The position numbers and the translations under genes are program-made. Of a DNA stretch of 64,000 nucleotides, positions 110 to 51,835 are shown one piece after another; within the stretch, counting starts at the first letter, position 1; each line of letters begins with the position of its first letter. The DNA lies in the NCBI GenBank assembly GCA_965637545.1, contig OZ281496.1:29202001-29266000 (forward strand), written 5' to 3'. The DNA is from Phallusia mammillata (taxonomy: Eukaryota). The notes under the pieces are model-generated. The model was given only the letters and a program-made list of their open reading frames with translations. It made no database searches and was not told the origin of the DNA.

Positions 110-3100
110 CTGAACAACACACAGTTTGACGACATCTTTGCTTGGTATTTCTTGATCAATTGCGTTTGTGATTAGATTCAACTCAAATCTACGTTCTTCG
201 GTGTCTTTGAGAAGTTGATTATCCTCTCCGTGGCTTAAGATGACACAAATAAAACACAGGTCGCTGTCCAGGACGTTTTGACATTCTGCAAACATGTTTT
301 TATTAACCGTTAATATTTGACGATGTTTGAGACAAGGCCGCATTTGCAAACAAAATGGAGGACATATTACAAAGCGTTTTGTATATAAGAGTCGTCCTGA
401 CGAAATCTTTCGAAGGACATGCCCACATGATCTCTTCCAATTGTATTTGAAAATATTTCATATTACTGAAAGTGAACCCAACTCTATTGCGAAAAAACTT
501 GTTGCGACATGCGTTTTGTACATAGAGTCCCCCTGGCGAATTCTTTCGAAGGACATGCCCACATGATCTGTTCTAATTATGTATTTTAAAAGATTCCGTG
601 TAAGTAAAAGTGAACCCAACTATATTGCGAAAAACTTGTTGCGAAATACATTTAACTAATCCCCACCTTTTCACAAACGCACTCTATCATCAAATCAGCG
701 CACGTAAACTTTGGTCGGAAGGTTATAAACGAGCATAGTTGTGTTTTGTTCACCTGATCTTAAGCTTTTTATCATTTTGTCATAAGCTTGATTTTCAATC
801 ACATGACATTGCATGTTGAGATTTTCTGCAAGCTCCTGTAAACGTTCTACGTCTTTTTGGCTTCCATGCCGATCTTTAGAAACCAGGTATTTCTAAACAG
901 ATGTTAGTCACTTTGGGAGAAAAGCATGTGGCTTTGTGAACCTTTTTTGCAATAAAGTAGTCTATATTGCAGTGACTCTCTTTGATATTGTTTTCAAATC
1001 CGACCCAACAAATAATACTCAATCGTATAACAAATCACACCTTTGGCTAGTCTTTAACAGATAAGGGAACTTTTGTACATTTAGTGTTGTCTTTTAAATA
1101 TCAAGCTGTCTTAAAACTCTAAGACATGGACACGTTTTTTCCCAATGTACTACACATAAGTAACATACAGTATGAGGCTTCGCAATTCGTTTTTATTACT
1201 TTAGTACCCTCATAAAACCGTTTTAACGCAATTGGATAATCGAATGCCGGCCAAGCGAAGTACGGATTAGCAAGAAAGTATGCAATGTCAGTTACCAGTT
1301 CACACCCCACTTTATTTGTATCGAAAATTGCAAAAAAATGCAACGACTTTTAGTACCTCATTGTTAATAATAACCATCCTTCCCATTCCATCTCTTAACC
1401 ACCAGCTCTTCAAAATGCTGAAACAAACAGCTTAGTAAATTGTTTTGGTATTATCTTGATGTGTTGGGCACCTTTTGGATGGGAACTTCGACCAGATAGT
1501 TTCGGCAACGCAGCAAGGCAACTTTTGGTTTGAATTCGACCGTCCCGAAATCCACTTTAGAAAATTGTGACGAGCAATACGGCGATAGTCACTAAAATTG
1601 CAGAAAGGAAATGGTTTATTAAATATTTATCGCAACGCTGCGCGAAGCAGACGATTGCAACTAACTCGTTTGAGAGTTCTCATGGTAGCTTTATAGTGGA
1701 TTGTATGGTATGTCCTTAGAATTACTACTTTTTACCGTATTCATATCAATGGTTAGCCAAAAGTTATGCTATACTTTTTCATAGTCAAACTCAGTGTTTT
1801 TTTACAATAATCACTGTTTTAGGGCATAATGGTCATCGTGCGTCGCTAAAAACTGTTGTGAATCGTCAAAACATAAAACAGTTTGTATAAGGCATAAACT
1901 TGGCCAAATCGTCCAGGGCATCTCACCCTTATAAGTTACAGACATAAAGAAGGAAAGACGGGCAAAATGCAGACTTAAAATATTTACAACAACTGAGTAA
2001 GCTTCAAACATTCAAACAATAAACAAAATGTCTTACTCCTTGGTCAGCTCTGTTTTCCGCTGCTCATTGTCACTGTCTGATACAAACAGATAAACTTCAT
2101 TGAGACATAGATTCTGGAAGATTTGATGCTGCGTAATGCAAGTTATCTCCTGTTCAGCACCAAGTTGCTGCGAAATTTCTTCTACACTTTTGCAACACAA
2201 CTTGTGTTCATCAAACTGATCGCAATTACCACACAAACACCTGTAACACACAGCAAATAAATGCACAGAAAATATGTACTAAAAAGTTTAAATATAATGT
2301 TGACAATAGAGCAACCATTATATCATTTGAGACTTAAATTTGTTAAAGCAAATCAGCATGAAAATTATAATCAGAAATATCGTTGTTGTCCGTGATTGAT
2401 TAAAGTCTACAAGGGTATACAGCTCATTATACACGGGACCAACCTAGTTGCCATTGGATCAATTTAAATTCAAATCTATAATGAGACAATTTAGCACAAA
2501 AATCCAACCTGAAATTTAGTTGTAGTAATCCCATACTGGAGTCTAATCTGTACATGGTTATACAGTTAAAAACCAATTTTCTATGTATATGAAGCAGGAT
2601 CCCATAGCGATTTTACTATTAATCAGTGGTGGCATAGTGATATTAGCTTTGTTCTATGTCTTCCATAGAGCTATAGTGAGTACTTGGTGCAATGTTATGT
2701 GGTCAGTATAGATTTCTAATCAAGCCGTTGCTTGACTGTGCCTTGTGTTTATGGCCCTCGTAAAAGTGTTTGCGTAAACAATCTTTGTCACGTGTGTGGT
2801 CTACTGTACACTATTCAAACCTTTCAGGTGGAAACTCAGTTTCTATGCGTTCCTCGACACAGCAGGGCAAGCTTTTGTCGAGATTTCGTTTCCAAATCCA
2901 TTTCACGAAATTGCTGTGGGCAATGCGGCGATAATCACTAAAATAAAGAAGAGGGATGAAAAAAATCGAGAAGCGAACACAGCGTTTTATTATGTATTTT
3001 ATTACAGATGTTTTCAATGTATACATCAATGTAACAAATAAATATAATCAACATAGTATCTTAATCTGAGGTTGTAACGCCCTGGGCCTGTCAATCAGAC

Positions 3101-4099
3101 TTTCGGGCCTAAACGGGCTTTTCAAAAACGATTCGGGTTCGGGCCTGGCTCGGGCTCCAATTTCAGACCCGTTTACAACTCTGGTCCATTTATTCTGCAT
3201 AAAGGATGTAATGCTGAAATCGTTTTTATCATTTTATATCTTGATTTACTTCCTCTTATTCATGATTATTCTATGTTCTTAATAGCGAAATCGATATAAA
3301 CAAGAGTTTACAACAGTATATATACAGACTGATTCAAGTGAGCTGTTACAGCTGTGATACGTTCATTCATTAGGATTGAAAAGTAGCAGTTTCAGAAATG
3401 GCATTGGGCCACTTCATGTGAGAAGTGGTTATTGATTTCAAATGCGGGCCAACAACAAAAGGTCTAGAATTACTTGATCGAAAACAAGCTATTGTTAAAG
3501 ACTACCTCTAGACTTACTCGTTTGTAATCTCACACTCATTTTGATTATTGTTGCAGCAACTGGCAACAGACACGGCAAGAACAGCCCTTTTGAGGCACAC
3601 ATATTCGAAGTCAGCGTGGTGTGTTATGCAATCAAGGTTTGTTTTTGTTGCGATTTCTTCGGAGCTTTTGCAACAGAACTTGTTTGCTTCCAAATGGCTG
3701 CACTGTCCACAGATACACCTGCTAAAATCGTGCAAATCGTAACCTATGTCCCGAGAGTTTTGTGCATGGTTAAACCAAGTTATCAGGTCAGTAGAACAGA
3801 TACGTTAAATCCATACTTTGAAACTTTACAAGGTTTGGCTAGATTTGGAAACAACAGATAAACATAGTACATGCAAACAGGTTAAAGCTCAAAGAGGTTT
3901 GCTTAGATTTGGAAACAACACATAAACATGGGACATGGCCACAGCAAACAGCTTAAAGAATAGCAAATACATTCAGCCGCCTTATAAAATAGGGGCAATA
4001 TAATTACCTTTTAGCTTGGTCGTTAGCTACTTCATCCGAAACTTGGGCACTCCCTGTATGAGCTACGTTCAAATTCGATTCTTCTTCACTGTCACTCAT
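110..4099 (-). CDS. Gene A: double-ballast caspase family member, 5' part (continues off the left edge)
   Basis: Exons 4099-4008, 3721-3518, 2937-2821, 2240-2037, 1591-1472, 1417-1357, 892-754, 285-110 have GT-AG ends and compatible phases with no stop. Translation: MSDSEEESNL..., ballast 1 (CICGQC..FCC..CITHH..CL / YRRIAHSNFVKWI..LPCCV..IETEFP), ballast 2 (CLCGNC..LCC..CITQH / LPCCVAETIWSKFP), then caspase p20 (GRMVIINNE, DRHGSQKD, CVILSHG, KLCVVQ|). The ACRG exon would lie left of base 1. Confidence 0.87.
402..645. repeat. Imperfect direct duplication (~107 bp x2) in gene A intron
   Basis: TCTTTCGAAGGACATGCCCACATGATCT...AAAGTGAACCCAACT.TATTGCGAAAAA.CTTGTTGCGA occurs at ~402-508 and ~538-645. 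Confidence 0.85.
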
Positions 4100-7924: not shown

Positions 7925-10900
7925 CTATTTTCCATCCTTGGAAAACAAGACTTCACTTCTCAGCTGGGTTTGGGTCCATGGGACAGGATGTTTTTGATCT
8001 GTCATTTTTCGTCTCACCTTGGTCAGTATCTGATCGTAATGAATATTTACGAAAAAAAACGACAAAAATGGATATTTTTGGCGTTTAATTGAAAATGAAA
8101 ACATCGTTTACATCATTTATTGCTTTCAATACATTTTAATGTAATTCTACTAAAATGTCAAAAAGGTCAGTTTTACGCTGCCACAGTAAACAAACCTTGA
8201 ATAGATCGTAATGATCTTGGTCTTGGTCGTTGGTCACACAATGAAGCAGAGCATCGTAAAACGCAGAAATTCCCTTCTGTTTCTTGTTGTCCCTGAAATC
8301 TATACAAAAAAATCTTTAATGTTAACAAAGTTAACTTAAATTTACGAATAACATTAATGGCCGAATGCGAAAACAGGAATTGTCATTCGTCGTTAAGATT
8401 TTGAAATATAAATATATTTCACATTACCAGCTTTATGTGAAGACTTACGTCAGTCACTGCTGCGCCCTTTTTTATCTATCGTTTTTACGCAAAAGTGGAT
8501 ATAAATGAGTAACTGATGATGAGCATTTGCCGAAACGCTTAAGCAAAACAGCACTTTGTACGTCTACTTGGGCCGTTATTATTATCATTGAAGTCATGAA
8601 CGGATGCGTATGTAGTGTTCCAAATGATTCAAAGTTTTTTTTAAAAAAAAAACAACAACAACAACAACATATCAATAGCTACAAGATTCATTATAGTCTT
8701 TATCCACAAGGCAAGTAGTTGGGTGATTGTATTTTTAAGTTTGAAGTACAAGTGTTGTTAACTTATCTAAACAAGTAACAGAAGAATTATTTACATATTT
8801 TTTGCTGGTTCTGAAATTACGGCAAAAACGTTTAATGAATAAAAATAAATGAAAACCGTAGATACCTTCTTCAGAGAAGGTGATCATCACATCAGCGTCT
8901 GGGTGTTGAGGTAAATACCTATCTCCGTTTGATCCAATCGCGTCAGTTTCCACCACCGGAGGCTTCTATTGAAAAAGTATTTGTCAGCTCAATTGTCTGA
9001 AATAAAGTCCAACCTTTCATGGGTGTATCGCTGATAACATGTGCACCCTTTTTTGTAACAACATACCTTTTTCCAATGAAATAAATTTCTTATTTTATGT
9101 ATTAAACTTTTTTGCCATGAGAAAAAGAAGTTTGCCGCTTTTTAGCAAATAGGTAATCTTCTCTTTAAAAATTTTTACCTGTACGAAAAACAGTTTTGGC
9201 TGCCCTTTCAATGCGTCAGCAGGGCTTCTGCCATCGACCGAATCTTCACGAAACAGAGTTGTAATCTCTTTTAAGTTAAAACTGTCGTTGACATAGTTCA
9301 GATCGAATTTGTCCTTCGACTTTGTTTCAGATCTAATGGCGCACACGAAGCATGATATTGCGGTGAAGCCTCTCACATCTGCGAAATATATTTCCTTACA
9401 ATTTGTATGTAAACCTGTTCTTCGACAAGTAGGAAATAATTTATGCCGGTCTAATTTGTGTCATAGACTGCGAATAAATGTGATAAAGTGATTAAGACAT
9501 ACAAAGTAAAAATGTGTTGTCGTAATGAAATAAATCATTTTTATAAATACCAATTAAACATTTGCTCATGCAAAGGATGTTTTCAAAACTTATTTTGATA
9601 GTTTAGAATAATACGTATATCACCGACTTCGACCAGGTTGAAAAGTCTAGAATTAAAAAAAATACTTACAGCTCTCAATCTTGTTTAGTAAATCCACTTT
9701 ATTAAACTTAAATGTTTTAGTTTCTTGTCTGAGTTCAGAACATGGAGTTTTGATGTTGCTTTCTTTAAACCCCCACAACTTGGCCACGAGTCGGAGGGCG
9801 TTGATGTCTTCTTGAAATTTTCCCTTAACAATACAAACACAGTAACTGTTGAAAAACGTTTGGTAATGTAAAGTCAGATGGTTGGAATTAGTATACCTTG
9901 TGGCACAAATATTAAAACACCAGCATTAAATTACCTGATCCGCTACAATTACGAAAAGGCCACCCCTTTTCATATCTGTACTGTAAGTGGAAGGCCTGTT
10001 TAAGAAAAACAGTTAAAAGGTGCTGCTATTATTAGTACATTCAAGAAAACGCACGGAACAGTTTCAATTGTTGTTTTTAACTTGAGATGCAGTTCTTTTG
10101 TCAAGCGAGTTGTGCTGGAAGCTAACAATCTGTGCGGTTCGTTTTCGCGTTGTTCCATGTTGCGTTTCATGGCGGTTAGAGCCTATTCACCAGAAATATC
10201 ACGTACAAAAGACAATTTAAAACCAAAAGAAAGGAAATAACCTGCATGATTTCCAAGCCGTGTGATTGATTGAAACTTTTGCACAACTCATCAATAAATG
10301 GTGTACCCTTTGTTCGGTTACGAGTTCCTGCGTGACCTTAAAAATGTTTTGTACGTTTTAAACTCGGTTCTGTGTGACAAACTTACTTTTGACTTCTTTG
10401 TCGTATTTTGGTAATTGTTGTAATTACTACGCAATGGTAAAAAATCTCACTTAATAAAGCTCACCATAAACTGAGCAGTATGTGATCAAAAAGTTTTCAT
10501 CTCCCGGATCTTCGACATGTGACACATCCTCGTTTCTTACTGTAAAATTGTCTCCTCTACACGCCTAGGACATACACAACTTGGTTGTTAAATTATTTTC
10601 AAAAATTACTCGCATGGAACTGTTATTTGTTTGGACAAAGCTGATTTGCCACTATTTTAAGTTGGGTATCAATGCAAAACTTTTGTTTTACCGCATTTAT
10701 GTTTCAAAGCATTATTAAACCAAAGTAAATTAGGTTAAGCCTTTTTCATTGCAAACCATATCTGTTTTTTTCAATTTTGAATGCCCTCATTACTTGTTCA
10801 TGAAACATTTTAAACGAAATAAGGGATTTTTTTGATCAACCCATCCTTCGAATACTTACGTAACCAACATGTCAAAATTTACCTGCACAAAACACAGTTT

Positions 10901-13170
10901 TACCACATCTTTATGTACTATTTCTTTGTTTATTGTCGCTGTAATCCAGTTTAACTTGAATTTGTCTCCCTTGACATCTTCAAGAGTATGATTTTTTGCC
11001 CCATGGCTCAAAATGACACAGATAAAGCAAAGATCGCTGTGAATGACGTTTCTACACTCTGCAAATAGCAGATTATTAAGTTATTTATAAGAACCAAGCA
11101 TAAAAAAATAGACTGTTCTGCGTAAAAAATATTAAATAAGTCACGTTAAACCTGATCGCAGACGTGTAATGATGTCATCATAACCCTTGTTTTCAATCAC
11201 ACGACATTGGATGTTGAGATTGTCTGCAAGCTCCTTCAAACGTTCCACGTCTTTTTCACTCCCATGCCTATCATTTGATGCCAGGTATCTCTAATATACA
11301 TGGGAATCTTTGATTGATATGCGTTTTTAAATCTCTGCCAGCATTTCACGTTGTTTCTACTTATAACTAAAAAGTGTAAAATAGTTTTTTTTGTTAAATC
11401 TATACCTCGTTGTTAATGATAACCATAGTCCCAATTCCATCTCTCAACCAGTCGCTTTTTGAAATGCTAAAAAAACACCGCTTGGTAAAATTCTGAGTAA
11501 TTGACTTATTGTCACTCCAAACCTTTCAGATGGAAACTCTGACCAAATTTTTTCGAGTACACAGCAGGGCAACTTTTCGTTTGAATCGGTTTGTCCCCAA
11601 ATCCATCTCACAAAATTACGACGGGCAATACGGAGATAGTCACTAAATTGTAAAAAAATACGAGGTGCTTCGCTACTCTGCAAACTAAGTGTAAATTAAT
11701 GTAACTATAAATTTAGATGAGAATAAAAGAACTATTTTGAATCATTGATATCAACTACTTGGGTTCAGGCCCTTGAGATTACAGAAGTCGATAAAAGAGT
11801 AGCGGAACAAAATCGTTTGTACTGTCTTATTTGGCAATCTCGTGCATATGCAAGTTTTCTGTTGACATACTCATTTGTTAACTCTGTTTTGCGCTTTTCA
11901 TTGCCACTGCCACATGTAAAGAGATACACTTTTTTGAGGCAAAGATTCTTGAAGACGTCGTGCTGCGTAATGCATTCAAACTTCTCAAGTTGTTGTGAAA
12001 TTGCATCGACGTCATTGCAACATACAATTCGCTCGTATACGATGCACTGTCCACAAAGACATCTTCAATTTGCAATAAAATAGTTTAAGTGAACATAAAT
12101 CAATTAACAACTAATATGAAAGTTTAAGATGTTGTGACACCGACTGGCTGAGACAATAAAGAAACGCAGAAATTTAAAAAAAAATATAATTATAAAACCA
12201 TCACATGGTTCATTGTTTATTCCGGCCTCTGTGATTTACTCGTTAATCCTATAGGAACATCTGTAGTGTTGACACAATCGTGTATACCCAGTTTTCTGAT
12301 CCTTAAAAAGACCCGGGAATTACTTGTCTTTGTACAAGTTAGTATTTGATTCAAATTAAGTTCGTATATTTTCACAAACCTTCCAGGAAACGTTGAACCA
12401 ATGCTTTTTGTAACACAGGAAGGCAAATATCTGCGTTTCCCAATCCATTTTTGAAAATTGCTGTAAGCAATACGGCGATACTCGCTAAAAATGAGGATGG
12501 GTTAAAAAAGTTCAACGATAAATGACCAAACTTTTCTACTGTAGGCAGTCCCCATATATGAGTTTATTTTTGACGGAAATGTTTTAATGTCAAACTTACA
12601 TTGCTAAAGTAAACAGGATAAATGTATTTTGTTTGACTAACATTAAAAATCTTGTACCATCAACTTGAATTAGTTATATGTTTACTTACTCGTTCCCTAT
12701 CTCTTTGCTCTGACCATCGTTGTTTGTAACCTCCCTTGTCACGCTAAGAACATCTTTATTGAGACATACAGCTTTGAAATTAGTATGTTGTGTTATGCAC
12801 TCCGACCCCGATTTTGTTGAAATTTCCTCATCGTGTTTGCAGCACAACTTGTTTTTGTCATCAGTATTGCATTGCCCGCATGAGCACCTGTACAGATAAG
12901 TAATCCAATTTAACTAAATTTCCTCGCATAGTGGGAAAAAATGAGCTAATGGCAAGCTTCTTAACGAAAGCACCCATGGGCTACGGGTGTTTCAATACCA
13001 GAGCAATAATATGAATAATGACATCGAAAGAAACACAGGAAAGCTTATTACAAGGCATATACAAGTTATACTTACCAACTGGTTTGATCAAAAGTGGTTT
13101 CATCTAAAACCTGAACACATGTTGTTTGCTCGACATGCAAAGTGGATTCTACTTCCATGGAGTCACTCAT
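7925..13170 (-). CDS. Gene B: complete 17-exon ballast-ballast-caspase-pseudocaspase protein, 705 aa
   Basis: Exons 13170-13076, 12887-12690, 12484-12380, 12062-11871, 11642-11523, 11466-11406, 11290-11152, 11058-10883, 10564-10465, 10336-10242, 10182-10055, 9980-9935, 9823-9670, 9378-9179, 8965-8866, 8299-8196, 8029-7925. All GT-AG; total 2118 nt, open to TAG. Motifs: WCSCGQC..KLCC..CITQH..LPSCV; GTMVIINNE, DRHGSEKD, CVILSHG, FVQ|ACRG, GTRNRTKGTPFIDELC; second domain GLFVIVADQ, CAIRSE (no His), GQPKLFFVQ|KPP (no Cys), PWTQTQLR. Confidence 0.92.
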
Positions 13171-15500
13171 AATTAATTTAGTCTACTTAGGTGCATCACG
13201 TTCTGCAGTTTACTTACATATGTTAGCATCATAAATTAAAAATATAATACTAAACCGTGCGGCGACTTAACTTTCTTGAAATTTGAGTTGGGCCCTAATT
13301 TAGTTTTATCAATTTCGAACATGACTCTGCAAAGAAGTGAAACATTTCGTTGTAAACGCTTTGTCACTGTTGCAAATAATGTTAGGCGTTTGTAATAATC
13401 GGTACTATTTATACTTTAATCATCACGTAGGCCTTTTCTTAAGTACACCTGGTCGTGTTGCATATTTGACAATTCGAAATGGACGTTGAAGCCTTTATTT
13501 ATATGTACCAATCCACTTATAAAGGTTTCGCTTGTTTCAGCAAACACTTTGTGTTGTTACAAAGTCATGGGACTTTATTTTCTTGCGAAATTTCACCTGG
13601 TAGTGACCTTTCGAACTAAACTAGGTAACATTAACGCTGCTTCAGTCTGGAACACACCATTCACCTAGTCAGATTTTTGTTTCGGGTCATTTACATACAT
13701 GTTTTTAACAGCTCTGTCATCGGCGATAATGTTTGCATTTCGTGTGCAGGGTTTTGCTGAAGTGATTGCCGGGGCAATGCACATCGCCTACATGGCTATT
13801 TTAAGACCATTGGTCTGAAAGCTGTACTTTGCCCAAGTTTGAAAACAAGTTGGTACGTTGGTGCACTATTCACAGTTTTGAATAATCTGAGCAAAAAATA
13901 TAAGCCAGTATTTAATAACAATAGTACGTGTCGAAACGTAGTCATGTTTTACACGCTAATACTGGCTTCCAAATTTTTGGTCAAATCGGTACATGTCTAT
14001 AAGATGCAAATTTTACTATGGTACACTTTGGATTGGCAGTTTTTGGAACAAAGATATGATGGGTGTAGGAATTTTGTTTAAACAAGACAACGCAGTTAAC
14101 CTGGTTTAAACAGGTAATGGCACTTTCATACGAAAAAAAAACAGGGTCCTAGACTTGATTCGTTTGCTGCACAATGACGAAATAAACTTCGGTTGTTCTT
14201 CAATAAACTTCGGTGGTTCTTGCAACATAAAGAAACTTTCGTTGTTTGCCAATGTGTTGCAATGTCAGCATGCAGGCGGCCTTATGAACTTTGGGGTGAT
14301 GTTTGTTTCTTGTTGTTGTTGTTTTACATTTACATGCAGGTTTTTATTACCTTGGTCGACATCAGTGACATGTGACTTTCGTAATCAATGATTTAACGAA
14401 GTGTTTGCAAAGTTCGGCCGTAATGCGGGTTGCACAAAAGAAACGTATGTCAATTAATTAGAATTCTTGCAAAAATTAGAATTCTTTTAGAATTCTATGA
14501 AATTTGCGATCTCTTTTTTCAAGACTGCCGATTTTGATGCAGCTTTTCTATCGCCCTAAATTTTAGATTAGGTTTATTCATGGTTTGCGCGTAAAAATAA
14601 TACTCACTTGTTTACAGAAAAAGATTTGTGATTGCCTTCTCGGAATATGGTCTCAAGCAAGTATTCACTTACAGCTAAAGGTAAGCGCTATAATTAATAT
14701 TATTCACTAGAAAAAAAGTCGTTTCTCTAATAGGAAAAATCATGACCCATAAACTTTATAACAGCGGACTTTAGGTGCTTTTTAGTCGCTAAAACGGCCG
14801 TTCGACCAGCAACCGCTTTATGATCGTTTTTGCGTAACTTGATCGGTGTTGATCCAATTGTATGCGATGGGTCACATCAAATTAAAGTTAACAAACTGTA
14901 GTAGGAAATTGTTGACAGAGCTATATAAAGCTGGCAGCCAAAACGACGCTGTGGCGCTCAAGCCGATGAATATTATTTCAAAACTACGCGTATTGTTAAC
15001 TGTTTTTAGTTTGTGCGGTAAATCCGTGATTAGCGTTGAGCATTATGTCAATATCTGACTATCGTATCTATTTTGATTTTTAAATATTGGTATTGTTGAA
15101 TGGTTTTTCCCTGGTGCTCGGTGCAGTAGTTCATGCAAACCAAATTTGTATCAACAAGAAACAAGAAAATGCTCTTGCTTGTGCCAAGACGATTACCTTA
15201 TGTAGTTCTGTATTGAACGAATCAAAAAATACACACATTTTATAAAACAAAATCAAACCACATTTACACATTCGTTGAAAATATTTTTGTTCTTCTGACC
15301 TGCTGCAGGTAACAACGAACATTCACAAATCAAATTGACATTTACAATCATTTTGTTAAACGCTTTAAGTAGTTGCTTTATAACGCGATTTACAAAATTC
15401 TAAGGAATATAAATGTATATATTGAATTTTGGTAGTAATTCATGTCTATGAGAGAAATTATTCTTGTTTAGTTCAAATTAAGCGATCTTTTTTGTTGCAT

Positions 15501-18500
15501 CTATTCTCTATACTTGGAAAACAAGACCTCACCCCTCAGTTGGGTTTGGGTCCATGGAACGGAATGGTTTCGATCTGTCATTTCTCTTCTCACTTTTGTC
15601 AGAATCTAATTATACAGAGTCAGTTAATTTTAACAATAGCGAAGCAAGATACATATTCTTCTGCAAGATAAATGTTGCATTTTAACAAAATGTCAAAGGT
15701 TGAAGTGAAATGATCACAAACCTTGAATAGATCATATTGTTCTAGGTGTTGGTCGTTCCTCACACATTGAAGCAGAGCGTCGTAAAACGCAGATATACCA
15801 GTTGCTTTCTTTTTGTCTTTAAAACCTAAACGATACAACAAACACAATCTTATAAAAGAAAACAATGTCGTTGCTGTGTATATTTGCAAAATTATTTCGT
15901 GGCTGAAAGTTTTAATTTTTGACGAACTAGCAGATTTACAAATAAGTTTTCAAACCTGCTTTCGAAAACGTAATCATTACATCGGCGTCTGGGTGTGGCA
16001 AAAAATCATCTGCGTTTGTTCCAATCGCGTCTGTCTCTACCCACGATGATTGTTTCTAAGAGAACAAACAAATTTCGTTACTATTGTTTGAATTCAATTA
16101 CAGTAGAACTAATAACCCTACCTGTACAAAGAACAACTTCGGTTGCCCTCGCAAGGCTTTTGCTGGGCTCATATTCTCGTCGCAGGCGGAATCGCTGCCG
16201 CGAAACAAAGTTGTAAGTTCCTTCAGGTCAAAAGTGTCGTTTCCACAATTCAGTTTGAACTTCCCGCTGGCGTTTTCGTCTGATATAATGGCGCAAACGA
16301 AACATGATATTGCCCCAAATTCTCTCACGTCTGGAAAATGTGCCGAAAATCCCGAAAATTAGGACCTATTTCAAACTTTTTCTGTTTTATCTATTTTCTT
16401 GGAATTAAAGTTAACATTTTGTTTTCCGTTAATTATAAATTAAACAAAAAGTTGAAAGATCAGAAGCCAAAAGTGAAGTGCACTCACAATCAACAATCTT
16501 GTTAAGCAAATGCACTTTACTCAGAGCTTCCGAGCATGGAGTTTTAATGTTGTTTTTGTCAAATCCCCACAACTTAGCCACTTGTTGAAGTGAGCGGATG
16601 TCTTCTTCAAATTTGTCCTTGAAACACATATGCGGCATGCTTTGAAAAATGCACACTGTCTATTGTGAAATTGTGTTTTCAAAACAATTACCGTGGCTGT
16701 TGTTGGCCGTAGAATACGAAGAATAGAAACAAAATATACAACAACTAACGTTATGTTACCTGCTGACCAACAATCACGAAAAGACCACCCTTTTTCATAT
16801 GTTGCCCGTAAAGCGCGGGTCTAAACAAAAAACAAACAAACAATTAACTGCTTATTTTATTTTTATGTACAACTATACGAACGGTATTGTCACATTGCTT
16901 GTTTTCAAAACGAGAGGTAGTTCTCTGGTCAAACGTGTTGTACTGGAAGCTAACATTCTGTATTCGTGCATGTTGTACTTCACGGCCGTTACAGCCTAAA
17001 GGAAAAGACCAGAAAAGATTTTTTTCCGAATTGAAACCAACGGACGGAAAGCCATAATACCTGCATGATTTCCAAACCGTGTGATTGATTAAACCTCTCG
17101 CACAACTCGGTAATAAATGGTGATCCTTTCTCAATATCACGATATCCCACGTGACCTTACAAACATACAACCGCTATTAAAGAGTATTGAACTTTTTATA
17201 CACATTTATTTAAACGAATAATATTACGATGTAATGTGGATAAAAAAGCAGAAATGTGCATACATTAAAACTAACCGTAAACTGAGCAATATGTGATCAA
17301 AAAGTTTTCTTTTGCAGGATCTTTAACATGAAATATGTCCTTGTTTTCCACCACATGCCTGTTTCCTCTACATGCCTAATAACAAGATGGCATTGGTAAC
17401 GGGTAACAGATAACGGTAACAGATAATCCCTAGAAATTCACCTGTACAAAACACAACTTCATTACGTCTTTGTATCTTATTTCTTTATGCATTGCTTTAA
17501 TGATCAAGTTTAACTTGAATTTTTTCCCTTTGATATCTAAAAGCGTATGATTTTTTCCTCCGTGGCTTAAGATGACGCATATAAAGCACAAGTCGCTCTT
17601 GATGACGTTTTTACATTCTGCGAACCACAAAATAGATTAATCATTAACAAACTCTAATTTTCTAATTTCAAAGCAAGGTCTGATGCAAATTGGAACAGCA
17701 GTTAAACACCTACATCTCAATATTTTCAGGGTAATATTTATCAAAATTAAATAGAAAACTTAGTTTGTATACCAAAACTTAAACTTGTCATGATGTCATC
17801 GTAACATTTATCCTTAATTACACGACATTGCAGATTGAGATTGTCCGCGAGTTGTTGCAAACGTTCCACATCTCTTTGACTTCCTTTTCGTTCGTCCATA
17901 TTTTCGTATGCCTAAAATAATGGGTACTTTGTACAAACACTTGATACGTGAGTTTTGCCATGTGATTTGTTGTACCAAAGTGTTTTATTGTCTTAAACCT
18001 ATTCATAACTTCCCGACTCTTAACTAAACAAATTTTGAAAGAGTTTTTATGCTTCTATTGCGTTTACCTCATTGTTAATGATAACCATGGTTCCGATTCC
18101 ATCTCTTAACCACCCACTCATCGAAATGCTATGACGAGATTATTGATAAAATAATTTGGTATTCACAAAACATCATTCACAAACCTTTCAGACTTGAACT
18201 CTAACCAAATAGCATCGAGTACACAGCAGGGCAGCTTATGGTTTGAATCAGTTCGTTCCCAAATCCACTTTACGAAATTGCGACGGGCAATACGTAGATA
18301 GTCACTAAATCATTCAAAAGTGATTAAATATGTGTCCATGTGTGGTACACACGGCTAACTGTTACATCGCCATCTTCTATTTAACTAGGTATGGGTGCAA
18401 CGCCATTTATTGGGCCGTTGGCAGAAGCTTGACTATATCGTCTACCGAGTTTTTTCTTATACTTACTCATTTTTTAGATCTGTTTTTCGTTGGTGATTGG

Positions 18501-19869
18501 TGTTGTCAGATACAAAAATAAATTCCTTATCCAGACAAAGATCTCGAAACCTATGATGCTGCGTAATACAGCTAACCTCCGAGTTGGCAAGATGACTTGA
18601 AATTGCAGTCACCGCTTTGCAACACAGCTTACGTAAGTCAAACTGGTTGCAATGACCGCAAGAGCAACTGTAATGTGCAGAAAGTAAATCAAGTAAAAAA
18701 TAAGTGAGCAATAAATGCTGGCCCTGATGCTGTGTTAAAGTTTTAACGTATATGCTACGAATGTAGACCTTGGTTTTAATGTAATTTTACAAATTTAGTG
18801 CGTATAATTTATCTCAGCTTAACAGACTAATTGGTTGTCTACACGATGTATTCTGTATACACCACTACCTTGGCACTAATGTTTATGATTAAACTAATTG
18901 GTTGTAGACACATAACTATTTTGCCACACAAGCGACATACAGCGTGTTAAATCAAACCTTTCAGGAAACTTTGACTCAATACGTTTTTCGACACAGCAAG
19001 GCAACGCTTTGTTCACATTTGTTTGTTTCCAAATCCATTTTGCGAATTGGCTGTGAGCTATGCGACGATATTCACTGCAATTTAAAAAAGGCATGAAAAT
19101 CCAGTGACATAAAATATATTAAAATTTTCCAGTTTGTTTCGTTTAATGGTATCAATCATCTTCCAAAAGCTATATATTTTGAATAAAAAGATTCGTTTTA
19201 ATTCTATATGTGGAAAATAAGTTTGCCATCATATTTTAGAAGTGATCTCCAAACATACTCATTCGTTCTCTCCGTTTTGTGTTGGTTATTGCTGCTACTC
19301 ATGCCAGATATGAAAAGAACTGCTTTGTTGAGGCACACAGGTTCGAAGTCTGCATGGTGGGTTATGCACTGAAGTCCCGATGTTGCTTTAATCTCGTTCA
19401 CGCTTTTGCAACACACCATATTTTTCTCAGAATGAACGCATGCCCCACACAAACACCTCCTGCAAGAGTAGTATTAAATTCAACTAATTAAATAAACAAG
19501 GATAATTTAGTAAATCACTACTAGAAACTTATCTAAAGCGTTATTCTCGTTTATTCAAGAAACAATTTGCAAATGAGTCCCTATTTCGGATCATGGTTAT
19601 AAGGGATCACATGGATACATAATTTGCAACAGTTTTTAGGTTTCATTTTTGTATATTACATGCCTATAAAACGATAACGCCTCACTTTGCACAGCGTAAT
19701 TTTTTTTAAATAACATCTAGAAATCTTCTTGTGTATGTTGCGAAGCCTAACAAAAAGAAACTACAAAATACCACCCAGCCCGATCGTCAGTGCTGTCATC
19801 CGAAACTTGGGCACTTCCTGTCTGTGCGACGTTCATATAAGACTCTTCTTCTTCTTCGCTGTCAGACAT
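15501..19869 (-). CDS. Gene C: complete 17-exon ballast-ballast-caspase-pseudocaspase protein, ~709 aa
   Basis: Exons 19869-19772 (or -19775), 19459-19259, 19074-18958, 18667-18467, 18304-18185, 18128-18068, 17911-17773, 17617-17442, 17375-17276, 17155-17061, 16995-16883, 16820-16760, 16617-16488, 16330-16122, 16055-15956, 15825-15722, 15605-15501. Phases match gene B; open to TAG. ERKGSQRD, CVILSHG, FVQ|ACRG, GYRDIEKGSPFI; dead domain CAIISD, FFVQ|KQS, VETDA, PWTQTQLR. Confidence 0.92.
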
Positions 19870-25616: not shown

Positions 25617-25659
25617 AAGTTCCTTACGTCTGTAAATATATCGTAAAAGTAAGCTAAAT

Positions 25660-25857
25660 CAGTGGCTGCGACCCGGTACCGGTCCGAAAGGAGATAGTTA
25701 CCGGCCCGTATAAAATAAGCTTAAGGTTGTCACAAGCTGTAATAACTTATGAGTTGTAATAATTTAAGTTCCATTGCTGAACATGTTTTTTTCAAACCTG
25801 TTCGCCGTGCTGTTTTTTCAAACCTGTTCGCCGTGCAAAAAAGGTTGCCGACCCCTG
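25660..25857. mobile_element. Probable hAT-type MITE in gene D intron
   Basis: Ends in GCAAAAAAGGTTGCCGACCCCTG; related sequence at ~63236-63410 in gene F intron (GCAAAAAAGGTTGCCG). Left terminus degenerate. Confidence 0.45.
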
Positions 25858-28800
25858 TACAAAGTAACTACTTTTTGAGAAAAAAAACTTTGTTTTAGCA
25901 AGATCTTGGTTAAGAAACCTTGCCGTATGTACTTTTGTTCAGGTGCTCAAATTGACTCTAAAAGTGCCTTACCCATGCTAATGCGTAACGCACAAATGTT
26001 TCGCTATTTTGTTTTCTTCTTTCCAAATTAGGATTCTTGTATTTTGTTTTTTTATGGTGTTTTATTATCCACATGGCAAAAAAATGTATGTGAATTAATT
26101 TGATAAAATACTTACAATCGACAATCTTGTTCATTAAACTTGTTTTCGTCAACTTAAAATTCCCACGATGCGCTTCTTCTCTCAGTTCCAAGCAGGGTGT
26201 TTTAATGTTGTTTTCCTCGAAGCCCCACAATTTAGCAATTTGTTGAAGGGCAACAATGTCTTCACTAAATTTGTTCTATAGTGTAATTACGAGTTTTTGA
26301 TATTATTTTTCATTATCTTTTGAAGTGTAAACATAAAGCTGACACGAACTTATGGCCTAACAGCTTTTATTAATATTAAACCATCTAAAAATACCCCAAA
26401 ACTAATGTTAACTTGCCTGGTCACCAACAATCAAAAAAAGACCTCCTAGTCTCGTGGAACCATCGTAAACTTCAGGTCTGTTTTTTAATGACAATAATTT
26501 ATTTAGTGCTATTATCTGTGGAACACATAACTTACGGAATAAACGTTTCATTCGCGTTTGAAAGCAAGTGCACTTCGTTGGTTAATCGTGTTGTGGTGGA
26601 AGCCAAATATCCGTATTCGTCGCGGCGTTGCTCTATTTTGAGTTTCATTGCTGTTACAACCTTAAAAAAAACAGTTTTCAACATTTTCATTAACTCACAT
26701 TTGAACAATGAATGTGGGTGGTGGAAGTGCACCGGCATTTTGTCTTTGGCAATTGCTCCATTACCTGCATAAGTTCCAGGCCTTGTGTTGTATAAAAACA
26801 ATGGCACAAATCAATAATGAACGGCGTTCCTTCCTCAGGATAGCGATACCCATAGTGACCTTGCAAACATAGTGCACGTTTATAAAGTTCGTTCTTTGTT
26901 ACAAATTATACACGTTTAACTGCTTCATTTATGCTATGTATTGACACTCGACAAAGCTATTTTAACCGATTAATCTCACCATATACTGAACAGAATGTAA
27001 TCAAAAAGTTTTGGTATCTTCGATGTGAAACACATCCTCGTTTTCTAAAGTGTGATTTTCTCCCCTGCATGCCTTTAAAACAGGTTTATTCGTAAAAATG
27101 CTTGACTTTGCCCAAGGCTTGCACGCTTGTCAAAAATATCCTTACCTGTACAAAGAGCAATTTGGTGATATCTTTGTTTGGTATTTTCTCGTTTATAGCA
27201 TTAGTGATCCAATTTAACTTAAAAAAATTATTGTACTTATCGACAACAATATGATTTTCCTTTCCATGGCTCAAGATGACACAAACAAAGTACTGGTCGC
27301 TGCCAATAACTTTTTCGCATTCTGTACACAACAAACGAATAATAACGGTAAATGTGAGCATAAATACGCTGATTTACAAAATTATTCTGCAGGCCAGAGT
27401 TTTAAGTCGAACCTCTAATACAGACAGGATTCAAAGATGTTTAAAAATACGACTCAGTGACCTCGGCAAATGTCGCCAGGCGCCAGGTTATTTGAATTAT
27501 TGGCTGTCATATAACCTGATCTCAAGCTTTTCATGATATTCTCATAGGGCTCATTTTCGATGACACAGCAATGCAAGTTGAGATTGTCCGCAAGCTTTTG
27601 TAAACGTTTTACGTCTTTTTGACTTCCGGTTCTGTCTGTGTATGGTGCCAAGTATTTCTAAAAGCAAATTTATATTTTGAACCAGTGCTAAAATCAATGA
27701 ACGTGTTGTTGAATATTCTATATTTTACTTAAACCAAATAGATATAATCATTTGTATTTGTAAATACATACCTCGTTGCTGATGATGACCATCGTTCCAT
27801 TTTTCTCTCCCAACCACCAACTCCATGACAAACTAAAAGCATTATTCGGAAATTTTCAAGCCGTTGGTAGTTTTTAGCGAAAATATAGGATAATTTTAAA
27901 TCAATATTATTCATGGTTTGCTTTTGACTATTCGCGCTGTGTATCAAAAAGCAAGTTTTCTTCGATAGATCTTATACTGAATGCGATTTTAGTTTTTTCC
28001 ACCTTATGGTTTGATGATATTCACAAACCTTTCATAGGAGAACTGTAATTGAATAGTTTTGGCAACACAGCAGGGCAAGTTTTTTTTTGCATCTGTTTGT
28101 CCCGCAATCCATTTCACAAACCAGCGACGGGAAATGCGGCAAAGGTCACTGAAACCATAATGAAAGTCAGTAGGCGTGTCACATAGTCTTGCAGCAATGC
28201 CAAACTCAGCAAAAAATGTCAAGGATGGTGTTCCACACATGAAACCGGTAATGTTCATTTATTTTGTATTTAAACTTGAAAACTGTTTTTTTTAACTCAT
28301 GCTGCATTTACTGGATTTTGGTTTCAAAATATATATATATAAACTCTTGAAGCCAGACTTACGCATTTGTCGTCTCAGTTTTTTCCTGGTCAGTTTTTTT
28401 TTTCAGTTCCAGTAATACTCAGTACATCTTTATTAAGGCACATAGCCCTGAAAACTTGGTGCTCCGTTATGCAGTCCACATCCACATCCTCTAGCTGTAT
28501 TAAAATATCCCTGTCGTGTTTGCAGCATCTCTTACATTCTTCAATTCCGATGCACTGTTGGCACGAACACCTGCATTTAGGTGGTCAAAAAATAACCTTT
28601 TCTCATTTTCAGAGCAACAAATTGCAAATATAAGCACTAATTTTGAGTGTAAATATATAAATCTCAACCGCAGTGTTATCGTAAAACAGCCACGATAAGG
28701 AAATACGTGTTGCTATAATATTAACGATAAATGTTTATTGTCTTCATAAAACAGTTTTTGCAACGTTTTTCGCACACTACAAGTCTGCAAAATTATATCG

Positions 28801-30683: not shown

Positions 30684-30794
30684 TCAAACTGGATAAGGTT
30701 TGTCAAAACAAACTTGTTTCCTCAACTGGGTGTGGGTCCATGGAGCGAGGTGTTTTTCTTCGGTCATTTTGTTTCGAAGTTTTGAATTTAGTAT
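30684..30794 (-). pseudogene. Fragment H: orphan terminal exon of the caspase family
   Basis: Translates to ..LRNKMTEEKHLAPWTHTQLRKQVCFDKPYPV*, homologous to the last exon of D/G (PWTQTQLRKEVCFDKPKAV*). No upstream caspase exons nearby. Confidence 0.78.
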
Positions 30795-33050: not shown

Positions 33051-33656
33051 CATTTGGGGCTTCCAATGTTAAAACCAAACAAACACCCTAACTAATATTC
33101 AGAAGAATGGTCTTACGCCCAGGGCTAATCGTGACACAACAGTTAGGGACAGGCTTTATTAATTCAAAATTTCAAGGTTGAAGCAACAACTACGGGAGTA
33201 TAGTTCCTAAGCTTGATATTAGGTCCTCTTCATGTTGTGAGAATGTTTGTTTCTACTGTTATAAAATCATTGATTGTCCAGTTTGCTAAGTAATGTCAAA
33301 AAAATGTTATGGTAGTTACAGGCGTATTTGTGCTTATTTAAACAAAAACGCGACAAATTAGAAACATATCACGCTTTTGACCAGGTATGATGTTGGCACG
33401 ATTAGAACCAGTTGTTGGCTAAGGTGAGTTTTGCATCGCAGTGGACAAACTTGTTTGCTAACAACCATCACTTGTATGATGTTATCACTTGTCTGCTATT
33501 AGAGAAAATTCCTAAATTCTAAATATTTTTGCGCAATTCGAGCAAACTGAATGACTGGGTTTCGCGGATGGTTTGCTTTCTGACAGGCCAGAACGATGAC
33601 ACATCACATCGCGACTTAGAGGTCACCTTACCACGCGGAACTCTAAATGTGAAACA

Positions 33657-37500: not shown

Positions 37501-40500
37501 AACTCCAAAGATTTTGGTGCTTAAATCAAGCTGATGTTGGGTACAATCGTTTTGCCTAAACTTAAAATTACCTGGATACAGAAATGTCCAACAACGTTTT
37601 TGTCTTTACTTTTTCTTCGAAACTCTGCAACGAAGCTGCTCAATCTGAACTTTTTTCCTTTGACACTAGTAAACCGGTTTTCCCGACCATGGCTCAAAAT
37701 CGCGCAAACAAAATAACGATCATGTATATTTAGGTCTCTGCATGCTGTAAACAAAATACGGTTATTTGTAAATGATTTTCGTCAAAAACTTGCAGATTAT
37801 TTAGCGTTTTTTCCCGGCAATTATGGGTCCCCTTCCCTGAAGGGGACACATATTGATTTTACTCGAATTTGATTGTTTTTGTTCGTATTTGTTCTTGTTT
37901 GTTATTTCCCAAAGTTTGTCCGACCCGTTTGTCCATCACACGTTTGATGGATTTGGACGAAATTTACACAGATAGTAGATATAGTTATGTAGATGTGCAT
38001 ACCACTTTGTTTGTCCTGATAACCCCAGTATTTACCCCGCTAGCCACCTAAAATGACTGGGTTTGTAAACAGTGTCGGAATTGGCTGGAATTTGAACAGC
38101 TTGTGGAGTTGTTGCTCAAAACACCTCTCGGCCGGGTTGTTGCTCAAAACACCTCTAGTATTCGAAATTTTAAACAAGGAAGAAAAATTTAAATATTGGC
38201 AGATTGGGAACTTGGCCGAATGGCCCGGCGCGCCTGACCCATATACAGACATAGAAAACCCTGATCGGGATTCGTCCCCGGGAGAGTCCTGGATTCGGAC
38301 TCCGTGAATAAAAAATTTATGCACTGGCAGATTGGGCTGAAATTTTGCATTTTTTAGTTTAGTGTCAAACCCCATTAGTTACACTACTAGCCCCCCCCAA
38401 AAATGGCTAAGTTTATAAAACAGTGTCGGAATCGTGTGGGGACTATGGTTATCTCTTGAAATACACTATTTTTAACTTTACATGTGTGGGAACCCATGAG
38501 TTTGTGCCTGCAGAAACAACTAAGGTTATAAAAGACGATGGCTAATATGGGACCCAATACAAAATAATCAAAGGAAATATGTTTATGTTTTAAAATAGGT
38601 TATAGTGTATGTGCAAGGGCAATATGTGCTAAGCCACCCTTCGAGTTAGCTTTCGTCTTGACTTTTTTTGTCTGTATTGTCTCGTTTTTTTTCCGGTAAT
38701 TAGCTTTTGATTACTACACGTTACCTTACCATTCTCAAATTGAGTTTCAATTTCTTCCACATTTTCGTCATTAATCACTGAACTTTCCATTTGAAGATTT
38801 TGAGCCAAATCTATTAACTTTTTAACATCTTCTTGGGTTCCATGGCGTTCCTTTCCTTTTTTGTCGTAAATCTGTACAAATCTCAAAATATAACTTTAAG
38901 AAACTTGTTATCAACTAAACATTTAAAAGCGTTTGATTTAAGTATAATCGGTAGGTAAATACAACAACAAAGGGTGATCGACGGTTTAAGTTAAATTGAC
39001 GTAAACACGACGTCTACCTTTGTACATTTGTAAACATACCTCGTTGTTGATGATGACCATGATTCCCAACCTCCCAGTCAACCACGGATCACAGTTCCGA
39101 CTAAAAGATATTGAATCAAAACCTTTCCAAAAGTCTACTTAGAATTAATAGCTTCTAACCACTATTTAAATCCTTAATCTATTTATGTCATACATTTACT
39201 ACTATTTATGTCATACAAAGTGGAACACTAAACAAACCAAATACCACACTTTGTTTGATATGATTGTTTTGCCACTATGCCGTCTACATTCTATAACAAC
39301 TATGCTAAGCTTCACCGCGACAATTTGTCTTTTGGATTTTATGTCCAACAACAAATTATTGAATGAGTCACGCAGACTTTTGCCAAGTAAACGATTTGAT
39401 AAGGTCTTAAGCAAGTGGTTGTAATTTAAAGGAAGAATCCAGATTTATTATCAACAAATTTTGTCAGGTTACGGATCGGATCAAGAACCAAAGCTTTTAG
39501 GGATAGAAAGCGGAGATATTTAACATTTAGCGACAGAACGTTATCGCACTTATCCAGTGGAAACTTGTTTATGATCGAGTCAACAGCACAACAAGGCAAA
39601 ATTTTGTTCTCCCCAGGGAAACCGCTTTTTTCCCATATCCATTTCATGAAGTTTATCCGAGCTGTTCGACGATACTTTCTGGATGAAAGAAACGAATAAG
39701 TTATGCACCTTGTATCACAAAGTAACAATTAATCTGTTCGCGTCGCGAAGTAATGTAAGCATATACCTTTTAAATCTTATGCATTCGACAAGCTCAGTTG
39801 TTAGAGCCAATCAAATAACGGCAATTATGCCGTTAAAAAGGTTTTGGCAAAACTTACAAGGGAGGACTGTTGAAATTCCTACCTCTTTCTTTTTTCTGTT
39901 AGACATTCGTCTTTATAATTGCCAAATACGAAAAAAGAAGTTGCGTCAAGGCAGAGGTTTTCAAATGTTTTATGATTGGTAATACATTCGTTTTTTTGAC
40001 GCAATTTCTCTTTGACTTCTGGGTACGATTGGCAACATTTTGTTGGATAGTTGACAAATTCAGTGCATTCTCCACACGAACACCTGTAAAAATGTTACCA
40101 TCGGGTTATTACTGAATTCTATGCGTGTCCCGTCCGGTTTGCCAAAATGTCCCGGAGTTTGGTCTCCCACCAAAACTATATTATTAACGTGTATGTCTCT
40201 GTTTATTGCTTAGTTTGCTATTTTAAAATAAGCAGTATTGTTAGTATAAATGTAAGTTGATTAAATATTGGCAATATTTTCGAAATTCTACATTTCACAA
40301 ATGTTTGCTCTTCCCAGCGGAAGAGGCTATAATTGCATTATATACAGCTTTTCGGGGACGAAGTCTGAAAGTTATAACTGTATCTAAAACTTTTCGGTCT
40401 TACTTTTTTTCTTCTCCAAACAGCTGAGCTATACGAAAAATTAGACTCATTTGGTGGCTGTTATAAACGTGCTTGTCCTGGTTGTGTGGTTGTTTGAATG

Positions 40501-51818: not shown

Positions 51819-51835
51819 TTATTTATGTTGTTTAA

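What the first reader, a model, noticed from the sequence alone, without database searches (positions are those of the whole stretch)
11523..12887. P2X7-ballast/nanor/KolX-like zinc domain used as a caspase prodomain
Seen: W-C-x-C-G-x-C..L-C-C..C-I-T-x-H..F..CL..L, then YRRIA(Y/H/R)..F..W(I)..LP(C/S)CV..I...FP. This order matches the P2X7 tail (WCQCG.C..LCC..CITT..F..L / RHCAYR.Y..W..LPSCC..IR.EFP). The seven Cys positions are kept in almost all of the eight copies (D has WCSCQQC). Established: the P2X7 ballast binds two Zn ions and GDP/GTP; related domains are reported in nanor and in the KolX accessory protein of Kolobok transposons. The basic residues after LPxC are largely not kept here, so nucleotide binding is uncertain. 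Inference: the domain may oligomerise the caspase, sense a metabolite, or act as an integrated decoy that triggers death on meeting transposon- or virus-encoded KolX-like proteins. It is also a fusion-based hint linking ballast domains to caspase activation.
Basis: partly seen in the sequence, partly recalled or inferred. Interest (0 to 1): 0.85.

Follow-up and report, generated by a model that had tools for sequence, protein, structure and literature searches.

The report
Ballast-like zinc domains heading caspases
A tandem family of animal caspase genes carries one or two copies of the zinc-binding core of the P2X7 "ballast"/transposon KolX domain in front of the protease, a domain combination not found in the databases or papers searched, which gives this poorly understood domain a testable partner in cell death.

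Summary
On the minus strand, 11523-12887 holds four exons that splice (GT-AG, all phase 2) into two ~100-residue modules. Six further modules lie in four neighbouring genes. All seven zinc-ligand cysteines of the P2X7 ballast are kept in 8 of 8 copies.

Homology to the P2RX7_C/ZCD/KolX family is well supported:
- A profile of the first-half exons finds 454 proteins, and 69 of the 91 scanned are PF20478.
- An HMM of database homologues matches all eight copies end to end (42-71 bits).
- A profile holding one module and 29 homologues hits rat P2X7 residues 469-600 (E 1.7e-22).

Gene models for g1-g3 give unbroken reading frames: an acidic first exon, two modules, a linker with a conserved WLRD/G, a caspase with SHG and QACRG, then a second, dead caspase-like domain.

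The modules are under purifying selection (dN/dS 0.2-0.4, dS about 1 or more) and form one clade. They share an intron position with the genome's own Kolobok KolX gene.

Not shown: transcripts (none in four runs), the fold (only a half-domain could be folded, inconclusive) and any function. GDP-binding residues are largely lost. No such fusion appeared among the listed database hits or in the papers.

The parts
13076..13170 (-). g2 exon 1: start codon and a 31-residue acidic N-terminus. It ends TG|gtaagt, which supplies the W before the first Cys.
12690..12887 (-). g2 module A, first-half exon (CxCGxC, CC, CITxH, F, CL; six of the seven zinc cysteines)
   Evidence: Pfam PF20478 positions 82-125, E 0.009 on the exon alone
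12380..12484 (-). g2 module A, second-half exon (EYRRIAY..F..WI..LPSC..I...FP; seventh zinc cysteine)
11871..12062 (-). g2 module B, first-half exon
11523..11642 (-). g2 module B, second-half exon (DYLRIARR..F..WIW..LPCC..I...FPSE)
   Evidence: Pfam PF20478 positions 147-184, E 0.018
   Evidence: conserved in g1, g3, g4, g5
10055..11290 (-). g2 active caspase domain, five exons (11290-11152, 11058-10883 with SHG, 10564-10465 with QACRG, 10336-10242, 10182-10055)
9935..9995 (-). g2 first exon of a second, catalytically dead caspase-like domain. It is joined in phase through a CC|GT donor kept at the same place in g2, g3 and g4.
1472..4099 (-). g1: exon 1, modules A (3718-3518, 2937-2821) and B (2240-2037, 1591-1472). 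Its caspase exons run to the window start.
18185..19869 (-). g3: exon 1, modules A (19456-19259, 19074-18958) and B (18667-18467, 18304-18185). The reading frame is intact through 12 exons to 16760.
28029..28570 (-). g4: single module (B type) in a broken gene. It has a frameshift in an A-run of the first-half exon and another in the QACRG exon, and a LINE lies inside the dead domain.
39556..40083 (-). g5: single, more divergent module ahead of a caspase and a dead caspase-like domain

Best explanation
SHOWN OR STRONGLY SUPPORTED. The region encodes two tandem copies of the zinc-binding core of the ballast/ZCD domain (Pfam P2RX7_C, the fold of P2X7 residues ~477-583 and of Kolobok KolX and nanor). 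They form the N-terminal region of a caspase. The gene reads: acidic exon 1, module A, module B, a short linker, an active caspase domain (SHG, QACRG), and a second, dead caspase-like domain.

At least seven such genes lie in a tandem cluster: five in the window and two just past its end. The module was captured once, most likely from a KolX-like gene, since it keeps that gene's phase-2 intron. It was then duplicated inside the gene, and the whole gene was duplicated, all under purifying selection.

INFERRED, about one chance in three. Each module binds two zinc ions through its seven cysteines and acts as a protein-protein interaction or self-association unit. It would take the place that CARD or tandem DED domains hold in initiator caspases, bringing the protease to a partner or to other copies. 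It would then be cut off at the conserved WLRD/G site in g1-g3. It probably does not bind GDP/GTP as P2X7 does, because the equivalents of R574, R578 and K583 are lost.
For: - Motifs and splice structure.
- Profile of the first-half exons against 1.84 billion proteins: 454 hits at E<=1e-3.
- 69 of the 91 scanned hits are PF20478, best E 1.7e-29.
- An HMM of 24 database homologues matches all eight copies over positions 2-112 of 113 at 42-71 bits.
- An HMM of only the second halves of those homologues ranks six of the eight second-half exons as the top six of 1635 six-frame segments.
- A profile of module g2A plus 29 homologues hits rat P2X7 6u9v residues 469-600, E 1.7e-22, and only P2X7.
- Unbroken multi-exon reading frames with conserved AG/GT sites and phases in g2 and g3 (12 exons) and, to the window edge, g1.
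- The caspase exon profile hits only caspases in the PDB.
- dN/dS is 0.17-0.39 with dS about 1 or saturated between modules.
- The ten caspase-linked modules form one clade (81/99), with A, B and g5-type subclades.
- The genome's Kolobok KolX gene has the same intron position and phase.
- The isolated human ballast domain is a soluble trimer (PMC9574498).
Against: - No RNA evidence for any exon join. Four runs guessed to be RNA hold none of the locus.
- Pfam on single exons stays under the cut-off: 16.4 and 15.4 bits against 23.5. Narrow profiles of the eight copies alone do not reach P2X7 in the PDB.
- Fold not confirmed. The half-domain model had mean pLDDT 70, its only Foldseek rows were P2X7 at E 3.8 and 9.8, and VIA gave Z<2.
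- The donor after each module is the weak GTTTG in most copies, so read-through giving a module-only protein is possible.
- The module lacks the N-terminal half of the ballast that contributes to the P2X7 trimer, so self-association is an extrapolation.
- A dead caspase domain in the same chain could supply the dimer partner, which makes proximity-driven activation less necessary.
- g5 and its two relatives lack the Asp of WLRD.
Confidence: 0.7

Rival explanations
1. Exon 1 and the modules form their own short KolX-like gene or isoform. It would end by read-through into the intron after the last module. It would sit upstream of a separate caspase gene, or act as a module-only regulator in the way CARD-only or DED-only proteins do.
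For: There are no transcripts to decide. The donor after each module is the weak GTTTG, and read-through meets a stop within 3-31 codons. Free-standing ZCD proteins are the rule elsewhere (PMC7016195).
Against: The phase-2 donor after the module and a phase-2 acceptor on the next exon are kept in all genes checked. The beta1 exon has no upstream start of its own. The one-to-one pairing of modules and caspase has survived duplications with dS above 1 in seven genes. An isoform of this kind could still coexist with the fusion.
Confidence: 0.12
2. The modules are an integrated decoy or sensor. They pair with KolX made by active Kolobok transposons (or a viral look-alike) and set off the caspase, as a genome-defence suicide switch.
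For: The same genome carries a Kolobok element with THAP and Mutator-like transposase and an intact-looking KolX, in copies 94-100% alike. The modules derive from a KolX-like gene (shared intron). The family is tandemly expanded with a broken member, as immune families often are.
Against: The caspase-linked modules lie on a long stem (3.4 changes per site) away from the genome's own KolX and from database KolX-like proteins. They have lost family motifs (MPT..E, the IR after LPxC, the Y-x-G-F tail). Only 3-4 copies of that Kolobok family were found. dN/dS is well under 1 and gives no sign of an arms race. No binding test was possible.
Confidence: 0.08
3. The modules sense guanine nucleotides as the P2X7 ballast does and gate the caspase by GDP/GTP level.
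For: The P2X7 ballast binds GDP (PMC9574498). The R546 equivalent is kept in 5 of 8 copies and the H547 position is Arg in all eight.
Against: The equivalents of R574, R578 and K583 are replaced by non-basic residues in most copies (for example L/T/E/A, W/G/E/Q, S/G/P). R578 is kept in most other invertebrate ZCDs (PMC7016195). The C-terminal helix-loop that clamps GDP is absent.
Confidence: 0.05
4. The modules are decaying remains of an old KolX insertion and are not translated.
For: One gene (g4) is broken. No expression was seen.
Against: All seven zinc cysteines are kept in 8 of 8 copies. Frames are intact in g1-g3, g5 and the two neighbours. pN is 0.21-0.38 against pS 0.54-0.78. Splice sites and phases are conserved.
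Confidence: 0.03

Closest known systems
KolX accessory protein of Kolobok (Kol0) DNA transposons, and free-standing ZCD/nanor-like proteins (PANTHER PTHR36981)
   Same: Same zinc-cysteine core with the KolX-type features that P2X7 lacks: CITxH and the Cys in V-C-L. The first-half profile retrieves these proteins directly. The phase-2 intron just before the (K/E/D)YR motif is at the same place as in this genome's own Kolobok KolX gene. The acidic N-terminus is of similar composition.
   Different: The modules are not inside a transposon: no THAP or transposase similarity was found in the window. They are N-terminal and in tandem rather than a C-terminal single copy. They lack the PY.FEP N-terminal part, the MPT..E motif, the Arg of I-R after LPxC, and the Y-x-G-F tail. 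They sit on a long separate branch.
Cytoplasmic ballast of the P2X7 receptor (PDB 6U9V/6U9W; Pfam PF20478)
   Same: All seven zinc cysteines, and the collinear R-x-x-A-Y..F/Y..W ... LPxC..I...FP half. The profile hits residues 469-600. Both are a captured KolX-like domain fused to a host protein (PMC9587614).
   Different: Here the domain is fused to a protease, not a channel. It lies at the N-terminus and is doubled. Only the core (~100 of ~200 residues) is present. The GDP-contact residues R574, R578 and K583 are lost. An intron splits the domain, whereas in P2X7 it lies in the last exon (PMC7016195).
Initiator caspases with tandem interaction domains, such as caspase-8 (two DEDs) with its dead-caspase partner cFLIP
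   Same: It works alike on paper: one or two small interaction modules ahead of a caspase, a possible cleavage site before the protease, and a catalytically dead caspase-like domain as partner. Here that partner is in the same chain.
   Different: There is no death-fold domain. The modules are zinc-cysteine domains of transposon origin. The relation is an analogy of layout, not homology, and is untested.

Membership tests
P2RX7_C / ZCD (Pfam PF20478, PTHR36981) | Seven zinc-coordinating cysteines (rat P2X7 C477, C479, C482, C498, C499, C506, C572) | tested here: met
   Invariant in all eight copies. Positions were mapped through the alignment to 6u9v.
P2RX7_C / ZCD (Pfam PF20478, PTHR36981) | Significant profile similarity over both halves of the core | tested here: met
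   454 database hits, and 69 of 91 scanned are PF20478. The homologue HMM matches end to end at 42-71 bits. The independent second-half HMM picks 6 of 8 exons. The joint profile hits P2X7 at E 1.7e-22.
P2RX7_C / ZCD (Pfam PF20478, PTHR36981) | Pfam gathering score reached by the protein itself | tested here: inconclusive
   Only single exons could be scanned by reference. They scored 16.4 bits (positions 82-125) and 15.4 bits (147-184) against a cut-off of 23.5. The spliced module was not sent to Pfam.
P2RX7_C / ZCD (Pfam PF20478, PTHR36981) | Ballast fold | tested here: inconclusive
The first-half exon model had pLDDT 70. The only Foldseek rows were human and rat P2X7, at E 3.8 and 9.8, and VIA gave Z<2.
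P2RX7_C / ZCD (Pfam PF20478, PTHR36981) | Guanine-nucleotide contacts (rat R546, H547, R574, R578, K583) | tested here: not met
   The R546 equivalent is kept in 5 of 8 copies and H547 is Arg in all. The equivalents of R574, R578 and K583 are mostly non-basic. This is a feature of P2X7 rather than of the whole family (PMC7016195).
P2RX7_C / ZCD (Pfam PF20478, PTHR36981) | [quoted passage not shown] | tested here: not met
   Only positions ~82-184 are covered. The modules are N-terminal and tandem. Rump et al. report the ZCD always at the C-terminus.
KolX of Kolobok transposons | Encoded inside a Kolobok element beside a THAP/DDE transposase | tested here: not met
   No transposase-like coding and no DNA similarity to the genome's Kolobok element was found in the window. 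A true Kolobok with KolX lies elsewhere in the genome.
KolX of Kolobok transposons | Gene structure shared with this genome's KolX (phase-2 intron before the YR motif) | tested here: met
   One search compared.
Caspases (peptidase family C14A) | Catalytic His (SHG) and Cys (QACRG), P1-binding arginines, and strand order | tested here: met
   Gene models. The exon profile hits only caspases in the PDB, 24 of 24 at E<=0.01. Pfam PF00656 is weak on single exons.
Death-fold prodomains (CARD, DED) | Six-helix death fold ahead of the protease | tested here: not met
   No Pfam death-fold hit on the four module exons. The region is accounted for by the zinc modules.

The most novel reading that the evidence does not exclude
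The zinc modules are domesticated KolX baits. They pair with KolX (or with the transposase partner of KolX) made by active Kolobok transposons, and switch on a caspase that is already paired in the same chain with a dead caspase domain. The cell then dies when the transposon wakes. That would be an animal counterpart of integrated-decoy immune receptors, aimed at a DNA transposon.
Probability: 0.06. Interest if true: 0.92.

Novelty: new variant of a known kind. Interest (0 to 1): 0.62.

Why it matters
The ballast/ZCD domain is found across animals, yet its biochemical role is unknown outside P2X7. Published surveys describe it as a C-terminal domain of short proteins with almost no partner domains (PMC7016195).

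Here it is joined, under selection and in several paralogues, to an enzyme with a clear readout. That makes three questions testable:
- Does the core bind zinc and self-associate on its own?
- Does it recruit partners?
- What does a KolX-derived domain do for a host?

It would also add a third independent domestication of KolX, after P2X7 and nanor, and a new class of caspase N-terminal domain. The combination with an in-chain dead caspase domain is unusual for cell-death evolution.

Tried and rejected
- Narrow profiles of the eight copies against PDB sequences gave no P2X7 hit. Only the profile widened with database homologues reached it.
- Pfam on single exons stayed under the threshold.
- Transcript evidence: the run search found only two holders of the locus, neither on record as RNA. 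Four runs guessed to be RNA laid nothing on 9000-13300. This is no proof of silence.
After that I sent it to no other remote tool. Pfam on the whole module, a complex prediction and a full-length homologue search were therefore left out.
- Folding the first-half exon alone gave a middling model and no significant structural match.
- The ESM Atlas look-up of the first-half exon gave no usable hit.
- My first gene model joined module B straight to the 'RYLASND' exon. Comparison of paralogues showed a missed 61-base exon, and I corrected the model.
- A small exon read in the wrong frame was rejected as the link to the second caspase-like domain. The frame kept in paralogues gives the beta1 strand of that domain.
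- Literature searches for this fusion found nothing. The 'nanor' search was swamped by 'nanorod' papers.

Full report
SETTING
The window is a piece of a 240-Mb eukaryotic genome (contig C3, 29.20-29.27 Mb). It has about 36% G+C and short open frames broken by introns. Everything described here lies on the minus strand.

THE OBSERVATION
The exons are 12887-12690, 12484-12380, 12062-11871 and 11642-11523. Each has AG and GT at its borders and a length that is a multiple of three, and it starts and ends in phase 2.

Spliced, they give two modules of about 101 and 104 residues. A tblastn of the exon peptides against the window finds eight modules in five genes. Genes g1, g2 and g3 have two each. 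Genes g4 and g5 have one each.

The splice sites and phases are the same in all eight. The alignments show twelve invariant positions in the first half and nine in the second.

The residue before the first Cys is a split codon. It is W only where the module follows exon 1, and R or S elsewhere.

WHAT THE MODULE IS
Pfam on single exons gives P2RX7_C below the cut-off but in the right, collinear places: positions 82-125 for a first half and 147-184 for a second half. The evidence then builds in steps:
- A profile of the eight first-half exons, run against 1.84 billion representative proteins, finds 454 proteins at E<=1e-3. Nearly all are short.
- Of the 91 hits scanned, 69 carry PF20478 (best E 1.7e-29). 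None carries a caspase domain.
- An HMM built only from 24 of these database proteins matches all eight window copies from position 2 to 110-112 of 113, at 42-71 bits.
- The first half of that test is circular, so I built an HMM from the second halves alone. Among 1635 six-frame segments of the window, its six best hits are six of the eight second-half exons.
- A profile of module g2A with 29 database homologues hits only P2X7 in the PDB, at residues 469-600 of rat 6u9v, E 1.7e-22.

By that alignment the seven zinc cysteines of the ballast are C477, C479, C482, C498, C499, C506 and C572. All are kept in all eight copies.

The modules share with KolX-type proteins the His of CITxH and the Cys of V-C-L, which P2X7 lacks. 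They have lost the MPT..E motif, the Arg of I-R after LPxC and the Y-x-G-F tail.

Of the GDP contacts listed for rat P2X7 (PMC7016195):
- The R546 equivalent is kept in five copies.
- The H547 position is Arg in all eight.
- The equivalents of R574, R578 and K583 are mostly non-basic.

Rump et al. describe the ZCD as ancient, mostly in short proteins and always C-terminal. Kojima and Bao show that KolX of Kolobok has this fold and propose it as the source of the P2X7 tail and of nanor.

THE FOLD
A model of the first-half exon with a 72-row alignment reached mean pLDDT 70. Foldseek listed only two chains, human and rat P2X7, at E 3.8 and 9.8. VIA gave no Z of 2 or more. The fold test is therefore inconclusive.

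THE GENE
Exon 1 of g2 (13170-13076) starts with ATG, encodes an acidic stretch and ends TG|GT.

After module B, comparison of paralogues revealed a 61-base exon (11466-11406) that I had first missed. It encodes a linker with WLRD/G and the first caspase strand.

Five further exons give a caspase with the P1 arginines, SHG and QACRG. A profile of the His-bearing exon hits only caspases in the PDB.

The last of these exons ends at a CC|GT donor that lies at the same place in g2, g3 and g4, where g4 has the perfect GTAAGT. It joins in phase to an exon encoding the first strand of a second caspase-like domain that lacks the catalytic His.

The state of each gene is as follows:
- g2: a 490-codon unbroken frame over 12 exons, up to the start of the second caspase-like domain.
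- g3: 493 codons with the same sites and phases.
- g1: intact to the window edge.
- g5: the same layout with one module.
- g4: broken by two frameshifts and a LINE insertion.

Two more single-module genes lie 1-17 kb past the window end.

EVOLUTION
Between modules, dN/dS is 0.17-0.39, with dS about 1 or saturated. The modules have therefore been kept as coding sequence for a long time.

In a tree with free-standing ZCDs from this genome and from the database, the ten caspase-linked modules form one clade (81/99) on a long stem. It has A, B and g5-type subclades. This points to one capture, then an internal duplication, then gene duplications.

Elsewhere in the genome, a 4.3-kb repeat in copies 93-99% alike encodes a THAP domain, a Mutator-like transposase piece and a strong PF20478 match. 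About three or four copies of its KolX part were found. This is a Kolobok element with KolX. Its KolX gene has a phase-2 intron at the same place as the caspase modules. The window itself has no transposase similarity.

HOW IT MOST LIKELY WORKS
Shown: the identity of the module, its zinc ligands, the in-frame layout, and selection.

Inferred: the module is a zinc-stabilised interaction unit that stands where CARD or DED domains stand in initiator caspases. The isolated human ballast domain is a trimer in solution (PMC9574498). That makes self-association plausible, but that construct includes parts the module lacks.

Two modules ahead of an active and a dead caspase domain recall caspase-8 with cFLIP, as an analogy only. 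The WLRD/G site kept in g1-g3 fits removal of the modules on activation. Nucleotide sensing is unlikely. A decoy role against KolX is not excluded, but the long branch and the lack of any sign of an arms race do not favour it.

NOVELTY
No caspase domain appears among the scanned database hits, and the best listed hit scores far below what an orthologous fusion would give. No paper with this combination was found.

I rate it a new variant of a known kind: a caspase with a new class of N-terminal domain, and the ballast core in a new context. The main gaps are transcripts, structure and any functional test.

Noticed in passing
window 7928-10055 (g2); also 14700-16883 (g3), 24500-26536 (g4), 35880-36860 (g5): Each ballast-caspase gene runs on, through a phase-2 CC|GT donor kept at the same place in g2, g3 and g4, into a second caspase-like domain. 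That domain has its own beta1 exon (GGLFVIV) but no catalytic His (CFVCAIRSE / AIISDE).
   Followed up: partly
window 23105-25720 (minus) and 51186-54783 (plus): Two non-LTR retrotransposons (RVT_1; the second also has an endonuclease and an L1-like ORF1 piece). The first sits inside the dead-caspase part of g4, which also has two frameshifts, so g4 is a pseudogene.
   Followed up: partly
window 30892-33100, 44377-47060, 47062-49745: A segment of about 2.68 kb occurs three times, twice in tandem. Each copy holds two look-alikes of the acidic exon 1 of the caspase genes (MSDCEEESNLNV...) with no zinc module behind them. These may be duplicated 5' ends or spare first exons.
   Followed up: partly
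window 7956-8060, 15504-15605, 21756-21881, 30660-30785: A short conserved open frame (M(A/T)DQ..PVPWTQTQLR.EV) recurs once per repeat unit, downstream of each gene's dead domain. Its role is unknown.
   Followed up: no
window 11523, 12380, 18185, 18958, 2821, 28029: The donor after almost every module is the weak GTTTG, and all module exons are symmetric (phase 2-2, multiples of three). Skipping of a module, or read-through to a module-only protein, would keep or end the frame cleanly.
   Followed up: no
L007 1943-6231 (G000:C3:13.06 Mb); also L008, L009: A Kolobok-type element with THAP and Mutator-like transposase on one strand and an intact-looking KolX (PF20478, E 8e-11 on one exon) on the other. 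About 3-4 copies were found, 94-100% alike in the KolX part.
   Followed up: partly
L004 5098-6110 and L005 4557-5024 (G000:C5:21.88-21.98 Mb): A cluster of four divergent ZCD copies on contig C5. In the two fetched, the ZCD ends the reading frame. Upstream on the same strand lie repeated Gly/Val-rich modules and a conserved 'LQPFQDL.GVIRAWR.GSLVIEVVAEND' exon. This is another multi-domain use of the ZCD in this genome.
   Followed up: no
L001 1164-3325 and L002 600-4849 (just past the window end): Two more single-module ballast-caspase genes of the g5 type. L001 has C-x-C-x3-C in place of C-x-C-x2-C.
   Followed up: partly
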